A stretch of DNA of 15,230 nucleotides from sequence record KY579375.1; one strand, written 5' to 3'. The position numbers and the translations under genes are program-made. The notes below the pieces were generated by a model. That model worked only from the letters and a program-made list of their open reading frames with translations, was not told the origin of the DNA and searched no databases. Position 1 is the first letter of the stretch; each line of letters begins with the position of its first letter. Below are positions 572 through 11,033 of the stretch, in pieces.

Positions 572-1405
572 CGGGAAACTCGTGTCTGTTTATGAAGAAG
601 AATTAAGAAAAGCCCAAACATTTGAAGAGTTAAAGCAGAGATATGATGAAGCGGTAAAGCAGATAAATGACGGGAAAGCTCTTAAGAAACTTTAAAAGGT
701 CTTGAAAAGAGAGAATTCGAAATAAAGAAGGCTCAGTTTGAACAGCTGAAAGCGGAGTTAGCAAAAAAGAAGAAGAAGTTTAAGAAAGAGAGATTAGACA
801 TCAGAGTTAAGGTTACAAAGAAATGGATCAACAGCAGACTTTTCACCGCTGAGCACTATGTCGCTATGTTACAGCAGAGTAAAGATGGCTTACAATTGCT
901 GTTTCTGAGGAAAGCGAAACTGGTAGAGAATCAGGGCTATTTGATGTTGGAAAATAAGAAACTGAAGAAGGTATGGGTCTTAAACGGCGAACCTCTTCTG
1001 TTAGAGAAGTCAAAAATTCCATGGGGTAAGAAGTTTGTCGCTGTGCACTTTGTGTTACCTGATTTTCCGTATACTTTGGACTTGTCTGTAGACGATAAGA
1101 TCAGGGAATTAACGCTAAAGACTCTTAATGCACCACAGATGTTACATTCAATGGTGAAAACAAAGTTTTTCGAGGCATTAGCGAGAGCAGGAGGTGGGGC
1201 TGATTATACGATGCTTATAATCGGTGCAATCATGGGCATCGGAATAGGAGTGGCGATTGGCTTTGGAATAGCAAACGCAAATCTGACACACCTACTCAGT
1301 CAACATGTGGCAAACACAACTGCAACCCATTTAGCAACAACTACAACAACTACTACCTCACCTAGTTTTACGATTCCATCAAACAGCACAAAGGGGGTGA
1401 GCTGA
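564..1405 (+). pseudogene. b277: SSV1 B277-like core protein, frame-disrupted near 692-703 (real lesion or sequencing error)
   Basis: ATG at 564 reads MADGKLVSVYEEELRKAQTFEELKQRY...KKL to TAA at 693-695. The lysine-rich continuation EKREFEIKKAQFEQLKAELAKKKKKF... resumes in the -1 frame from 704 and runs into the 866-1405 ORF. One added base gives a 280-aa ORF with a C-terminal TM helix and Thr-rich tail. Confidence 0.85.
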
Positions 1406-9368: not shown

Positions 9369-9692
9369 ATGGACAAGGTCAGGAAATTATGGCTCCTCAT
9401 AATCATAGGTAACTTGTTTGATTACACGGTTACGCTTGTCCTATCCTATCTTGGATTGCTCTATATGGATCGCAATTTTTTCATACGGTATGACACAAGT
9501 TTCTTAGACGTTCTGATGACCTTAACCGGTGAGAAATTATTGCTCTTGAGCGGAGTTTACTGGTTTAGTAAACTATTCGATTATCTAAAAATCAGTAAGT
9601 ATAAGTGGATTGGACTACTACCTTTTGCAATAATAACTATGCTATTAGTGGGCTATATTATATTAGGTCTTATCGTTATCTTTCTCTTTTGA
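9369..9692 (+). CDS. Small multi-pass membrane protein
   Basis: Three to four hydrophobic helices; RBS AGGTGA at 9358-9363 favours ATG 9369. Confidence 0.8.
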   Translation: MDKVRKLWLLIIIGNLFDYTVTLVLSYLGLLYMDRNFFIRYDTSFLDVLMTLTGEKLLLLSGVYWFSKLFDYLKISKYKWIGLLPFAIITMLLVGYIILGLIVIFLF

Positions 9693-9693
9693 A

Positions 9694-9728
9694 GCCCTTT
9701 ATAAAGTCACACTTTCTTTTTCCGGCAA
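9694..9728 (+). promoter_or_regulatory. Leaderless promoter with embedded T-tract
   Basis: GCCCTTTATAAAGT identical to positions 1-14; TTTCTTTTT tract; ATG at 9729. Confidence 0.8.
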
Positions 9729-10664
9729 ATGAGGAAGGAACTACTTTCCCTAACCTTTCTAGCACTACTATTAATTCCAACACTAGGCATACTACCATCA
9801 GCACAAACAAGCCCAAATACATGGGTAATAGCGTTCTACCCCGGTTCATATCCTTCCGGTACCTCACCATCAAACTTTACCTCCTTCACAGTAAACTTTA
9901 CTATACCCCCTTTCCTGCAAACAAGTAATGGATATTTAGGATTCGTCTTGACGGCTACTGTGCCGGCCACAGAATATATTGGTGGACTTTATTCTGGCAC
10001 AGTGGATATTGCTCTACAAATAGGATTAATTTTTGTTACTCAAACAAACACTTATGTGTTAACAGCACAGGTATGGACACCCTATGGTACTCAAATTTAT
10101 GGTTATGCGGAAACTATTTATCTACCTGCTAACACTGAAGCTGTTATATCACTAATATATAATTATGCTAACGGACATGTGGCAATAGGACTTTTACAGG
10201 GAGGCGTAACGGTATATAATGTATATTTCCCAACATTGTATAGCCATAATAACTGTGTATATAATGTTACCAACAATGGCGGATTTTCAGAGCCTAGTGG
10301 GCAAAACCCGTCTTTTGCCATAGAAGGAACGTATACAGGTTCACCACCTTTTAATGATACTGGATGGGATGGAATGTGGTTCGACGGAGCCCCAATATCA
10401 GATATAAATGCTATGACTGGCTACTCTTCAGCAACCGGTGTAGGTGGTACCGCGTCAATACCTCCGTATTATGCTGAATCCGGTTTAACATTATTCCATA
10501 ATGTTTTGTTTAATTATTGGTATAACCCGTATGCATGGTATTTCAGTATAGGGACTCCACAAGATTATAGTGCTCATGGGTTGCACTACATTCAGCTATC
10601 TGAAGGTAAGGAATACAATACAATAAATGGTCTAAACTACGCTTTGCAATGGGTCCCACCATAA
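9729..10664 (+). CDS. Secreted beta-rich protein at the A291/B310 (killer toxin) locus; possible peptidase G1-like fold
   Basis: N-terminal signal peptide MRKELLSLTFLALLLIPTLGILPSA; N-glycosylation sequons; own promoter; located between the early block and vp4; LQIG and FAIEG motifs. Confidence 0.85.
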   Translation: MRKELLSLTFLALLLIPTLGILPSAQTSPNTWVIAFYPGSYPSGTSPSNFTSFTVNFTIPPFLQTSNGYLGFVLTATVPATEYIGGLYSGTVDIALQIGLIFVTQTNTYVLTAQVWTPYGTQIYGYAETIYLPANTEAVISLIYNYANGHVAIGLLQGGVTVYNVYFPTLYSHNNCVYNVTNNGGFSEPSGQNPSFAIEGTYTGSPPFNDTGWDGMWFDGAPISDINAMTGYSSATGVGGTASIPPYYAESGLTLFHNVLFNYWYNPYAWYFSIGTPQDYSAHGLHYIQLSEGKEYNTINGLNYALQWVPP

Positions 10665-10697
10665 GATATTTTAAGCAAATCTACTTTTTTTTAAAAC
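10665..10697 (+). promoter_or_regulatory. Terminator/promoter between the 311-aa and 111-aa genes
   Basis: TTTTAAGC at 10669-10676, T8 tract at 10685-10692, ATG at 10698. Confidence 0.6.
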
Positions 10698-11033
10698 ATG
10701 GAATTCTCGTCACTTCTAATTTTCGTTTCTGGTATAATCGTTTCTCTCTTAACTCTTTATTTCTCACCAGATTTTGGAAGGGTTAAACCAAATAAAAGAA
10801 ACCTATCAGTTGTGTTTTTATCAATAGTCCTTGTAGGGATAGGTTTGTGGTTTTATACCATTGACCACCCAACATTTATAGTACTACCATACAAAGAACC
10901 ACCAGGAGGGTTTTACCTTGGTCCGCCACCAACTAAATGTATTCCGCCTCCATGGTACGCTAACTTATGGCCATTCATAATCACAATAGGCTTAAGTATA
11001 CTTATAATTCCATTAATTAGACCAAAGAAATAG
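10698..11033 (+). CDS. Three-TM membrane protein at the C124-like position; candidate immunity protein
   Basis: Three hydrophobic helices, basic loops RVKPNKR and RPKK, and a Pro-rich loop. Confidence 0.82.
   Translation: MEFSSLLIFVSGIIVSLLTLYFSPDFGRVKPNKRNLSVVFLSIVLVGIGLWFYTIDHPTFIVLPYKEPPGGFYLGPPPTKCIPPPWYANLWPFIITIGLSILIIPLIRPKK

What the first reader, a model, noticed from the sequence alone, without database searches (positions are those of the whole stretch)
9729..10664. Secreted killer-toxin-locus protein looks like an acid glutamic peptidase (eqolisin, family G1)
Seen: after the signal peptide the order of motifs is SPNTW, NFTSFTVNFTIP, ALQIG (Q97, 10017-10019), YVLTAQVWTP, and PSFAIEG (E199, 10323-10325). 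Established: G1 peptidases show S.NW, FTSV...FTVP, LIQ.G, Y.AWYE..P and W(I/V)VE in that order, use a Gln/Glu dyad in a beta sandwich, and work at low pH. Genes at this SSV locus (SSV9 B310, SSV1 A291) have been linked to killing or growth inhibition of uninfected cells, and I recall no mechanism. Inference: the toxin is an acid-active secreted protease or a derived fold that attacks the S-layer or surface proteins of competitors. The Q-E spacing (102) is longer than the roughly 82 I recall for G1 enzymes, so insertions must be assumed.
Basis: partly seen in the sequence, partly recalled or inferred. Interest (0 to 1): 0.82.

Follow-up and report, generated by a model that had tools for sequence, protein, structure and literature searches.

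The report
Archaeal-virus killer toxin with protease-like fold
This gene of the archaeal virus SSV3 is a close relative of a proven secreted toxin that kills uninfected host cells. Its predicted shape and its few invariant residues fit an acid-active glutamic protease slightly better than the sugar-cutting enzyme proposed in print, but this is not yet shown.

Summary
The window is the complete SSV3 genome. ORF 9729-10664 (ORF32, 311 aa) is the 70%-identical orthologue of SSV9 B310, an experimentally proven secreted killer toxin.

Q97 and E199 are invariant in all intact family members, as are Q114 and W116. E199 is the only invariant carboxylate.

Two AlphaFold2 models give a concanavalin-A-like beta sandwich. 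The best solved-structure matches are glutamic peptidases: neprosin (G3) for model 1 and scytalidoglutamic peptidase (G1) for model 2. They rank ahead of GH16 glucanases and lectins, but the scores are marginal (E 1e-4 to 1e-5, TM 0.3-0.5).

At sequence level nothing is significant. Pfam, NCBIfam, PDB searches, hhalign, a G1 HMM and a collinear block test all stay at the level of shuffled controls.

The protein is not a G1 member: it has no propeptide, a 40-residue insertion after E199 and an extra C-terminal tail. A Gln/Glu acid peptidase is the best single mechanism (about 0.4). A lectin-like binder (0.3) and a GH16-like glycosidase (0.12) remain open. I could not measure the Q97-E199 distance because no coordinates were available.

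The parts
9698..9705 (+). TTTATAAA, an archaeal TATA-like box A of the T3-type promoter, about 24-31 nt upstream of the ATG, which implies a leaderless mRNA
   Evidence: Read directly. It aligns with the annotated SSV1 T3 'promoter box A' and is conserved in SSV9 and SSV11. In SSV1 the T3 transcript starts 1 nt before the A291 ATG.
9729..10664 (+). ORF32 CDS, 311 aa: B310-type fusellovirus toxin gene ('Gene 1' of the toxin locus)
   Evidence: Identical in SSV4 and SSV5 and 70% identical to SSV9 B252/B310. phrog_15623 matches over the full length, E 4e-197. Toxicity of B310 is shown in PMC8628083.
9729..9806 (+). Sec-type signal peptide, residues 1-26 (MRKE / hydrophobic core / PSAQ). The exact cleavage site is inferred.
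   Evidence: Sequence. It is conserved at DNA level across SSVs whose mature toxins are unrelated. B252, which lacks the signal peptide, is inactive, and an A291 cleavage-site mutant is inactive.
9807..10553 (+). Concanavalin-A-like beta sandwich, residues 27-275. pLDDT is mostly above 85 for about residues 47-186 and 45-68 beyond.
   Evidence: AlphaFold2 models and Foldseek against PDB.
10017..10019 (+). Q97 codon: candidate catalytic Gln, the counterpart of Q53 in scytalidoglutamic peptidase under the best collinear mapping
   Evidence: Invariant 14/14. Aligned to Q53 by hhalign and by the block chain. Lies in strand 87-102 at pLDDT about 90.
10068..10076 (+). Q114-V115-W116. The two invariant residues Q114 and W116 lie on the hairpin partner strand. 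W116 maps to W67 of G1, which positions Q53 and stacks on substrate.
   Evidence: Q114 15/16 and W116 16/16. Mapping. Role of W67 from PMC6154417.
10323..10325 (+). E199 codon: candidate catalytic Glu and the only invariant carboxylate of the family
   Evidence: 16/19, and the three exceptions are frameshifted or truncated fragments. Mapped to E136 by the block chain but not by hhalign. Lies in strand 195-200 at pLDDT about 66-68.
10329..10460 (+). Residues 201-244: a conserved insertion (GWDGMW...INAVAG.S..T.VGG) between the E199 strand and the IP.YYAESGLTLF strand, at the place where G1 enzymes carry their short flap
   Evidence: Alignments. Low pLDDT. The comparison with the G1 spacing is inference.
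10554..10661 (+). Residues 276-311: C-terminal tail with short helices and the highly conserved motif Y.QLSEGQSYNTINGLNYAL.W..P. G1 and G3 peptidases have no counterpart, and its function is unknown.
   Evidence: The tail survives alone in decayed proviral remnants.
10685..10692 (+). T8 run between ORF32 and ORF33: a likely partial archaeal terminator
   Evidence: Sequence. SSV1 has an annotated termination site at the same place. In SSV9 the downstream gene C108 is on the same transcript but less expressed.
10698..11033 (+). ORF33, 111 aa, with three hydrophobic segments: the allele-linked 'Gene 2', orthologue of SSV9 C108
   Evidence: 70% identical to C108. In SSV9, C108 neither killed nor protected.

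Best explanation
ORF32 is the SSV3 copy of the B310-type fusellovirus killer toxin. It is transcribed from a strong leaderless T3-type promoter and exported by a Sec signal peptide. Outside the cell it folds into a roughly 31 kDa, almost Lys/Arg-free, acid- and heat-stable beta sandwich with a conserved C-terminal tail. I propose that in the hot acid medium (pH about 3, 75-80 C) it acts as an endopeptidase of the glutamic type. E199 would activate a water molecule, and Q97 would polarise the scissile carbonyl and stabilise the intermediate, held in place by W116 and Q114. The enzyme would cut an exposed surface protein of cells that do not carry the virus, stopping growth or killing them. Shown: the toxicity and secretion dependence of the orthologue (literature), the fold class, and residue conservation. 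Inferred: that the protein is catalytic, that it is a peptidase rather than a glycosidase or a binder, the identity of the target, and the basis of producer immunity. It is not a member of family G1. At most it is a separate, propeptide-less family with the same fold and the same dyad chemistry.
For: Identity. 70% identical to SSV9 B310 at the same locus, with the same Gene 2. B310 alone makes supernatants that kill naive cells. It is active from an SDS gel slice at about 34 kDa, and the form without a signal peptide is inactive. The factor survives 30 min of boiling and is larger than 30 kDa. Fold. AlphaFold2 model 2 has pLDDT 70.7 and pTM 0.72, with the N-terminal two-thirds mostly above 85. 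Its top three PDB matches are scytalidoglutamic peptidase entries 2ifr, 2ifw and 1s2b (E 6e-5 to 3e-4, prob 1.00, TM by target 0.42-0.45). A B. subtilis protease, CPAVM1 (8xai), reaches TM 0.50. GH16 entries reach only TM 0.25-0.33. Independent model 1 gave neprosin (glutamic class) as five of its top eight matches. Residues. Q97, Q114, W116 and E199 are invariant. E199 is the only invariant carboxylate, which fits a Gln/Glu dyad and not a two-carboxylate glycosidase. There is no ExDxxE motif. Mapping. The best collinear mapping onto nine G1 blocks puts Q53, W67 and E136 on Q97, W116 and E199 in both SSV3 and SSV9, and hhalign pairs Q97 with Q53. Strand alternation places Q97, Q114, W116 and E199 on the non-core face of their strands (sequence reading). 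Signal-peptide cleavage leaves W32 as about the sixth mature residue, as W6 is in mature SGP. The mature protein has 1 Lys, 0 Arg and pI 4.2. G1 and G3 families are themselves unlinkable by sequence: 11% identity, and a G1 profile does not find neprosin in PDB. Absence of sequence signal is therefore expected for a distinct glutamic-peptidase family.
Against: No sequence method supports homology to any peptidase. The motif chain is not above shuffles. Foldseek E-values for peptidases (about 1e-4) are within a factor of ten of those for GH16 enzymes (6e-4), and lectins follow at 3e-3. TM scores are low and rmsd is 8-11 A. E199 lies in a region of only moderate confidence. The Q97-E199 distance could not be measured. 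hhalign did not pair E199 with E136. There is no propeptide, unlike all characterised G1 and G3 enzymes. Cells expressing the toxin gene alone are immune to it, which is easier to explain for a receptor binder than for a protease. Other SSV toxin alleles said to share the fold (SSV1 A291, SSV10 299) show no Q/E pair in my alignments. W, E and Q are also typical residues of sugar-binding sites.
Confidence: 0.4

Rival explanations
1. The toxin is a non-catalytic, lectin-like binder. The sandwich uses Q97, Q114, W116 and E199 to bind a glycan or protein receptor on the S-layer or membrane of sensitive cells. It kills by blocking an essential surface function, or the C-terminal tail perturbs the membrane. 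Producers are immune because nascent toxin masks or down-regulates the receptor, as in yeast killer systems.
For: Galectins and legume-lectin-like domains are recurrent Foldseek matches, with TM by target up to 0.62. Immunity is conferred by the toxin gene itself, and cross-immunity among alleles is nested. The mature parts diversify extremely fast behind a conserved signal peptide, as expected of a receptor arms race. Other alleles lack the Q/E pair. A Trp plus Glu/Gln cluster is typical of sugar-binding sites (established knowledge of galectins).
Against: Lectin matches cover only the core and have weaker E-values (3e-3 or worse) than the peptidases. Nothing in the sequence looks like a pore-forming or membrane-inserting segment. 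Killing by binding alone at low dose would need an unidentified essential receptor.
Confidence: 0.3
2. The toxin is a GH16-like glycoside hydrolase or transglycosylase that trims or remodels the N-glycans of surface glycoproteins. This is the reading published for the SSV toxin fold.
For: Abshier et al. 2026 report GH16 1,3-1,4-beta-glucanase 3AXD as the top Foldseek match for SSV1 A291 (TM 0.45, rmsd 10 A) and call the fold hydrolase-like. Here GH16 entries (xyloglucan endotransglycosylase 1umz, carrageenase 9xlc) score E 2.5e-4 to 7e-4.
Against: There is no ExDxxE catalytic strand and only one invariant carboxylate. PF00722 gives no hit. TM normalised by target is lower for GH16 (0.25-0.33) than for glutamic peptidases (0.36-0.50) in both models. 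Sulfolobales have no wall polysaccharide, only N-glycosylated proteins (established knowledge).
Confidence: 0.12
3. In SSV3 the gene is not a toxin at all. It would be an inactive allele, or a secreted accessory of the virion or its end filaments.
For: SSV3 itself has not been tested. Many related copies in genomes and metagenomes are truncated or frameshifted. The gene sits just upstream of VP4.
Against: The ORF is intact and keeps its promoter, signal peptide and all family-invariant residues. It is identical in SSV4 and SSV5. It shows no similarity to VP4. A291 deletion mutants still make normal virions.
Confidence: 0.05

Closest known systems
SSV9 (SSVK1) B310 killer toxin (DeWerff et al. 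2021, PMC8628083)
   Same: 70% identical over residues 25-311. It has the same locus between the B129-type zinc-finger gene and VP4, the same promoter, signal peptide and linked Gene 2 (C108/ORF33, 70% identical), and all invariant residues are shared.
   Different: SSV3 ORF32 has not been tested. 30% of residues differ, which may shift cross-immunity, as it does for SSV17 against SSV9.
Eqolisins, MEROPS family G1 / Pfam PF01828 (scytalidoglutamic peptidase 1S2B/2IFW, aspergilloglutamic peptidase 1Y43)
   Same: Two-sheet concanavalin-A-like sandwich, and the best Foldseek matches of the better model. A Gln on the central strand of a three-strand meander, a Trp on the next strand and a Glu on a later strand occur in the same order. 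Both are extracellular and work in acid. The mature N-terminus lies a few residues before the first Trp.
   Different: No detectable sequence similarity. No propeptide. Q-E spacing is 102 rather than 83. There is an insertion of about 40 residues after the Glu strand and a 36-residue C-terminal tail. The conserved G1 positions D43, G41, G44, G55, E69 and P72 are not conserved here. The host is an archaeal virus.
Neprosin, glutamic-class prolyl endopeptidase (G3, DUF239; 7ZVB, 7ZU8)
   Same: Top matches of model 1 over about 300 aligned columns. The catalytic-domain size is similar (252 aa against 285 aa), as is the dyad spacing (E188-E297 = 109 against 102). A Trp (W175) is indispensable. It is active at acid pH.
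   Different: Neprosin uses Glu/Glu, and its E188Q mutant is inactive, whereas this protein has Gln. Neprosin has a pro-domain of about 100 residues. PF03080 gives no hit.
GH16 beta-glucanases and xyloglucan endotransglycosylases (3AXD, 1UMZ)
   Same: Same fold class. This is the published comparison for the SSV toxins, and these entries match here at E of about 5e-4.
   Different: The catalytic ExDxxE strand is absent, there is a single invariant carboxylate, and TM scores are lower than for the glutamic peptidases.
Yeast killer toxins K1 and K28, encoded by dsRNA satellite viruses (functional analogue; own knowledge, and cited as an analogy in PMC7188992)
   Same: A chronic virus makes its host secrete a protein toxin that kills virus-free competitors. 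The toxin gene itself gives the producer immunity.
   Different: Unrelated proteins and mechanisms (pore formation; nuclear entry), a different domain of life, and no beta sandwich.

Membership tests
B310-type fusellovirus toxin (phrog_15623) | Significant full-length sequence similarity to SSV9 B310 | tested here: met
   tblastn gives 70.8% identity over residues 25-311, E 8e-110. phrog_15623 E 4e-197.
B310-type fusellovirus toxin (phrog_15623) | Position on the T3 transcript between the B129-type zinc-finger gene and VP4, followed by the allele-linked small membrane gene | tested here: met
   Gene order. ORF33 is 70% identical to C108. The promoter is conserved.
B310-type fusellovirus toxin (phrog_15623) | N-terminal signal peptide required for activity | tested here: met
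   Presence shown. The requirement is shown only for B310/B252 and A291 in the literature.
B310-type fusellovirus toxin (phrog_15623) | Supernatant of an expressing strain inhibits uninfected cells | not testable with these tools
   Shown for SSV9 B310, not for SSV3 ORF32.
Eqolisin, MEROPS G1 / Pfam PF01828 | Sequence match to the family profile | tested here: not met
   No Pfam hit at E <= 10 for ORF32 or any of 27 relatives. A G1 HMM run with --max scores -1.3 bits. hhalign scores 15.5, equal to the shuffled null.
Eqolisin, MEROPS G1 / Pfam PF01828 | Two seven-stranded antiparallel sheets forming a concanavalin-A-like sandwich | tested here: inconclusive
   The model is such a sandwich, and SGP entries are the top three PDB matches (E 6e-5 to 3e-4, prob 1.0). 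However, TM is 0.32-0.45, rmsd is 10-11 A, and the C-terminal third has low confidence.
Eqolisin, MEROPS G1 / Pfam PF01828 | Catalytic dyad Gln53/Glu136 pointing into one cleft | tested here: inconclusive
   Q97 and E199 are invariant and are the residues chosen by the best collinear block mapping. That mapping is not significant, hhalign does not pair E199 with E136, and no coordinates were available to measure the distance.
Eqolisin, MEROPS G1 / Pfam PF01828 | Other near-invariant positions (G8, G41, D43, G44, G55, W67, E69, P72) | tested here: not met
   Only W67 has an invariant counterpart (W116). G99 and P118 of SSV3 vary in relatives. No counterpart exists for D43 or E69.
Eqolisin, MEROPS G1 / Pfam PF01828 | Synthesis as a zymogen with an N-terminal prosegment of about 40-55 residues | tested here: not met
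   The first sandwich strand (TWVIAFY, 31-37) starts about 5 residues after the signal peptide. B310 is active at its full predicted mass.
Eqolisin, MEROPS G1 / Pfam PF01828 | Pepstatin-insensitive endopeptidase activity with an acid pH optimum | not testable with these tools
   Needs the purified protein.
Neprosin family, G3 / PF03080 | Profile match and a Glu/Glu dyad | tested here: not met
   No Pfam hit. The first dyad position is Gln, and neprosin E188Q is inactive. Only the fold match is present.
Glycoside hydrolase family 16 / PF00722 | Catalytic motif E-x-D-x-(x)-E on one strand, with two essential carboxylates | tested here: not met
   No such motif in the sequence. E199 is the only invariant acidic residue, and D214 and E250 are replaced in P0026 and P0019.
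Glycoside hydrolase family 16 / PF00722 | Profile match | tested here: not met
Glycoside hydrolase family 16 / PF00722 | Beta-jelly-roll fold | tested here: inconclusive
   GH16 entries match at E 2.5e-4 to 2e-3 but with TM by target of only 0.25-0.33.
Galectin / legume-lectin-like carbohydrate-binding domains | Fold match and the family's sugar-binding residues | tested here: inconclusive
   Core-only fold matches at E 2e-3 to 2e-2 with TM by target up to 0.62. No Pfam lectin hit. Binding was not testable.

The most novel reading that the evidence does not exclude
B310-type fusellovirus toxins would be a new, sequence-orphan family of glutamic (Gln/Glu) endopeptidases. They would be propeptide-less, active in boiling acid, encoded by a virus, and used as a diffusible weapon against uninfected archaea. 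Some other alleles at the same locus (for example SSV13 p30 and SSV10 299, which carry Leu/Tyr and no Glu where SSV11 p29 has FIQAGFD and SIVEAP) would be dyad-less derivatives with changed activity.
Probability: 0.3. Interest if true: 0.8.

Novelty: new member of a known kind. Interest (0 to 1): 0.58.

Why it matters
Fusellovirus toxins underpin a documented virus-host mutualism: infected Sulfolobus cells kill CRISPR-immune competitors. No mechanism is known for them. The only published idea is a generic 'hydrolase-like (GH16) fold'. Naming a specific dyad (Q97/E199, plus W116) turns the open question into a point-mutant experiment in an existing genetic system (pSeSD expression in S. islandicus with a spot-on-lawn assay). 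If the toxin is a protease, it would be the first virus-encoded secreted killer protease in archaea. It would also be a fourth structural lineage of glutamic peptidases and a hyperstable acid protease of possible practical use. If the mutants still kill, attention shifts to a lectin-like receptor mechanism, which would explain self-immunity.

Tried and rejected
1. Pfam, NCBIfam and PHROG scans of ORF32, 26 relatives and 8 other toxin alleles found only the orphan phrog_15623. No peptidase, GH16 or lectin family appeared.

2. A PDB sequence search with the family profile gave only spurious S21e hits. The same search with SSV11 p29 gave spurious lipocalin hits.

3. Two word-index searches and one exhaustive search of 1.8 billion representatives found only 20 proteins (E <= 0.001). 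The 17 best (E 1e-5 or better) are toxin relatives or fragments of them; the named ones come from Sulfolobales genomes. The three weakest are not clear relatives: P0025 shares only the signal peptide, P0026 is a very divergent homologue on an unidentified contig, and P0027 is a false positive. No cellular bridge to a known family exists.

4. The search for related loci in viral and genome collections added nothing new. The metagenome scan gave 14 loci, many of them frameshifted.

5. hhalign of the toxin family against a 30-sequence G1 alignment gave E 0.16-0.26, equal to reversed and block-shuffled nulls. The G1 HMM without filters scored below 5 bits for all toxins. Semi-global BLOSUM62 z-scores were mostly below 2 and no better than VP4 control segments.

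7. Prokaryotic G1 sequences were sought as intermediates, but only three actinobacterial loci were found and they were not used.

8. hhalign between toxin types I, II and IV was not significant once the signal peptide was removed. It twice paired LQIG with IQAG.

9. Foldseek against viral predicted structures gave only generic jelly rolls.

10. Paralogy with the neighbouring VP4 was rejected: BLASTP E 0.4.

11. Model coordinates are not exposed by the tools, so the Q97-E199 distance could not be computed.

A note on method: the query was my recollection of A. niger aspergilloglutamic peptidase, an industrial protease and not a toxin. The tool matched it to 1Y43, and from then on I used the sequences as the tool printed them. 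The SSV9 toxin was used only from its in-frame part and was not read through its frameshift.
Full report
WHAT THE WINDOW IS

The 15,230-base window is the complete genome of Sulfolobus spindle-shaped virus 3 (KY579375.1). The finding covers ORF32 (9729-10664, + strand, 311 aa).

The protein is identical in SSV4 and SSV5. It is about 70% identical to the SSV9/SSVK1 gene first annotated as B252 and later re-annotated as B310.

The gene order is the standard fusellovirus one. A B129-type zinc-finger gene and a small membrane gene come first, then ORF32, then ORF33 (111 aa, 70% identical to SSV9 C108), then VP4.

WHAT IS ALREADY KNOWN

DeWerff et al. (PMC8628083) showed the following for B310:
- B310 alone, expressed from a plasmid in uninfected S. 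islandicus, gives supernatants that kill naive cells.
- The form lacking the signal peptide (B252) is inactive.
- Activity elutes from an SDS gel at about 34 kDa.
- Producers are immune through the toxin gene itself.
- The downstream gene C108 neither kills nor protects.

They explicitly note B310 homologues in SSV3, SSV4 and SSV5. The SSV9 killing factor survives 30 min of boiling, is destroyed by pepsin and is larger than 30 kDa (PMC7188992).

Abshier et al. 2026 (PMC13431529) showed that SSV1 A291, at the same locus, is needed for growth inhibition and needs its signal-peptide cleavage site. They modelled A291, B310 and SSV10 ORF299 with AlphaFold3. They called the common fold 'hydrolase-like' because the top Foldseek match of A291 was the GH16 glucanase 3AXD (TM 0.45, rmsd 10 A).

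No paper in the searched library connects these toxins with glutamic peptidases. The object is therefore a known kind of gene.

CHECK OF THE OBSERVATION

All coordinates and motifs are right:
- SPNTW at residues 28-32.
- NFTSFTVNFTIP at 49-60.
- ALQIG at 95-99, with Q97 at 10017-10019.
- YVLTAQVWTP at 109-118.
- PSFAIEG at 194-200, with E199 at 10323-10325.

The PDB sequences of scytalidoglutamic peptidase (SGP) and aspergillopepsin II carry SNW, (F)TVP, AILQTG (Q53), YDAWYEWYP and AE(F/W)I(I/V)ED (E136), 83 residues apart.

The mature protein (residues 27-311) has one Lys, no Arg, pI 4.2 and four N-glycosylation sequons. That composition suits a protein that lives at pH 2-3.

IS THE RESEMBLANCE MORE THAN CHANCE?

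At sequence level it is not.
- Pfam finds nothing at E <= 10 for ORF32, for 26 relatives or for eight other toxin alleles. NCBIfam finds nothing.
- The family profile finds no PDB chain.
- I built a 30-sequence G1 alignment. hhalign against the toxin family gives E 0.16-0.26 and score 15.5. Block-shuffled templates give 14.4 +/- 2.6, and 42 of 150 reach 15.8 or more. Reversed profiles score 13.0-13.5.
- A G1 HMM with all filters off scores every toxin below 5 bits.
- Semi-global alignment z-scores are no better than for VP4 control segments.

I then ran a test designed before looking at the toxins. It takes nine conserved G1 blocks, requires them in order, and allows free gaps up to 70 residues.
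- SNW onto NTW32.
- TVP onto FT(I/V)P60.
- Q53 onto Q97.
- W67 onto W116.
- E136 onto E199.

The total score, however, is ordinary: z = 0.25, with 75 of 200 shuffles equal or better. The mapping is therefore the best available one, but it carries no statistical weight by itself.

This negative result has limited force. G1 and G3 glutamic peptidases share the fold and the catalytic Glu at only 11% identity. A G1 profile does not find neprosin or the B. subtilis CPAVM1/YncM structures in PDB either.

THE FAMILY AND ITS CONSERVED RESIDUES

The family is tiny. The exhaustive search of 1.84 billion representatives found 20 proteins (E <= 0.001). The 17 best (E 1e-5 or better) are toxin relatives or fragments of them, and the ones that carry names come from Sulfolobales genomes. 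The three weakest are P0025 (shared signal peptide only), P0026 (a very divergent homologue) and P0027 (a false positive). Many copies are fragments or frameshifted.

Members range down to 25-45% identity (P0008, P0019, P0026). Across all of them the invariant residues in the confidently modelled part are W32, Y37, Y69, V73, Q97, F102, Q114, W116 and G120. E199 is present in every intact sequence.

E199 is the only invariant acidic residue. D214 and E250 are replaced in P0026 and P0019. There is no ExDxxE motif. One carboxylate plus one Gln is what an eqolisin-type dyad needs. It is not what a GH16 retaining mechanism needs.

Residue alternation along the strands puts Q97 (with A95 and G99), Q114 and W116 (with T112), and E199 (with S195, A197 and T201) on the face opposite the hydrophobic core residues. 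This is read together with the strand assignments. It is consistent with a cleft, but it is not proof.

FOLD

Model 1 used 10 sequences and reached pLDDT 59 and pTM 0.63. Model 2 used the mature protein with 27 sequences and reached pLDDT 70.7 and pTM 0.72. In model 2, residues 47-186 are mostly above 85 and the rest is 45-68. Both models are all-beta sandwiches.

Foldseek against PDB, model 1:
- A putative sugar hydrolase (4qhw) ranks first.
- Five neprosin entries follow (glutamic class; E 1.5e-4 to 7e-4, about 300 aligned columns, TM by target 0.36-0.44).
- They rank ahead of GH16 xyloglucan endotransglycosylase, the di-glutamate mucinase HC7, lectins and alginate lyases.

Foldseek against PDB, model 2:
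- The top three are SGP entries 2ifr, 2ifw and 1s2b (E 6e-5 to 2.6e-4, prob 1.00, TM by target 0.42-0.45).
- Next come a GH16 carrageenase (6e-4, TM 0.27), B. subtilis 'protease CPAVM1' (TM 0.50) and YncM (0.47), XET, HC7 and galectins.

The fold class (concanavalin-A-like lectin/glucanase sandwich, to which G1 belongs) is therefore solid and agrees with the published AlphaFold3 models. Within that class, glutamic peptidases rank first in two independent models, both by E-value and by target-normalised TM.

The margins are small and rmsd is 8-11 A. The tools return no coordinates or residue alignments, so I could not measure the Q97-E199 distance.

The order of strands matches SGP one for one:
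- First strand right after the signal peptide.
- A strand ending in FTIP.
- A three-strand meander at 70-84, 87-102 (Q97) and 108-116 (W116).
- Four more strands.
- The E199 strand.

There are also differences. An extra hairpin lies at 170-180. A conserved but poorly modelled insertion of about 40 residues follows E199, at the position of the G1 flap. A 36-residue C-terminal tail has no peptidase counterpart. The Q-E spacing of 102 lies between G1 (83) and neprosin (109).

DIFFERENCES THAT EXCLUDE G1 MEMBERSHIP

- No profile match.
- No prosegment. The first strand begins about five residues after the signal peptide, and B310 is active at full predicted size.
- Most near-invariant G1 positions are absent (D43, G41, G44, G55, E69, P72).
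- It is not G3 either, because neprosin needs Glu at the first dyad position and its E188Q mutant is dead.

MECHANISM

The best-supported single reading is a secreted acid-active endopeptidase with a Gln97/Glu199 dyad that cuts a surface protein of non-producers. I put this at about 0.4.

The main rival is a lectin-like binder, at about 0.3. It accounts better for self-immunity through the toxin gene, for nested cross-immunity and for the hypervariability of the mature part. W/E/Q clusters also make sugar sites.

The published GH16-type glycosidase idea is weakest on residue evidence, at about 0.12.

The target, and how producers escape, are unknown under every reading.

OTHER ALLELES

I fetched the locus from twelve further SSV records (SSV1, SSV2, SSV6, SSV7, SSV9, SSV-Lassen, SSV-RH, SSV10, SSV11, SSV13 and three more strains). 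By BLASTP the proteins fall into unrelated types.

The promoter, the ATG and the DNA encoding the signal peptide are conserved across types, while the mature parts are not. This suggests cassette exchange.

Within the SSV2/7/10/11/13 type, only SSV11 p29 shows G1-like strings: NNWAGVAYS, FIQAGFDI, SIVEAP and ELPYVSGG..F.F. Its relatives have Leu or Tyr, and no Glu, at those columns.

In the published assays SSV11 p29 inhibited naive cells. SSV13 p30 did not, but it inhibited SSV9- and SSV17-infected cells. This fits an active-versus-dyad-less split. It rests on three data points and on alignments that are not significant, so I record it as a lead only.

VERDICT

The gene itself is a new member of a known toxin family. 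The mechanistic hypothesis is new, specific and cheap to test.

Noticed in passing
L003 (AY423772.1) about 1425-1445, compared with window 9729-9745: The deposited SSVK1/SSV9 sequence keeps the conserved TATA box and ATG-AGG-AAG of the toxin gene. It is 1 nt shorter than SSV3 just after codon 3, so the frame hits a stop after 7 codons. This explains why the gene was first annotated as the truncated B252. Downstream the frame is open and homologous.
   Followed up: partly
window 9690-9806; L002 805-915; L030 2905-3015; P0025 and P0010: The promoter, the start codon and the DNA encoding the signal peptide are conserved among SSVs whose mature toxins are unrelated. P0025 and P0010 carry a signal peptide almost identical to ORF32's on a completely different mature protein. 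The locus looks like a cassette that recombines behind a constant 5' end.
   Followed up: partly
L030 2954-3865 (SSV11 p29) compared with L032 2925-3845 (SSV13 p30), L029 2415-3314 (SSV10 299) and L021 2897-3814 (SSV2 305): SSV11 p29 has strings resembling G1 peptidase motifs (NNWAGVAYS, FIQAGFDI, SIVEAP, ELPYVSGG..F.F). Its relatives have Leu/Tyr and no Glu at the Q and E columns. In published assays p29 inhibits naive cells and p30 does not. The resemblance is by eye and not statistically significant.
   Followed up: partly
L016 4010-4297 (+), 4328-4615 (+), 5606-5797 (-), 6577-7023 (-); also L008, L010, L011, L014: A metagenomic contig that looks like host chromosome (L016) holds decayed proviral remnants. 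One is a lone C-terminal 95-aa toxin piece next to a broken C108-like gene. There is also a second toxin fragment of another subtype and a zinc-finger fragment. Several metagenomic toxin copies are frameshifted. Toxin genes decay often once they are integrated.
   Followed up: partly
L035 2061-3077 (P0026): The most divergent homologue (338 aa, about 27% identity) keeps Q, QVW and the PSVAIEG Glu. It sits on a 5.4 kb contig whose other genes match no Pfam or PHROG family and are not arranged like a fusellovirus. The family may extend to another mobile element.
   Followed up: partly
P0027, compared with ORF32 residues 213-255: A 1136-aa leucine-rich-repeat protein scored E 4.5e-4 with 10 stretches, only because its repeat NQISDINAVAGLTNL resembles the toxin's ISDINAMTGYS/INAVAG motif. 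This is a false positive of the profile search.
   Followed up: yes
L033 2903-3856 (MK054221): One Yellowstone SSV carries at the toxin locus an unrelated, acidic 317-aa protein with a different N-terminus. This is possibly yet another toxin type or a replacement gene.
   Followed up: no
L022 2891-3866 (SSV6): SSV6 has no gene of about 300 aa at this locus. It has a 99-aa ORF and a 213-aa ORF annotated as similar to the C-terminus of VP4, followed by a 1232-aa end-filament gene.
   Followed up: no
window 839-1405: The GenBank record marks ORF7 of SSV3 as non-functional and missing about 95 N-terminal residues. The open frame 866-1405 is what remains.
   Followed up: no
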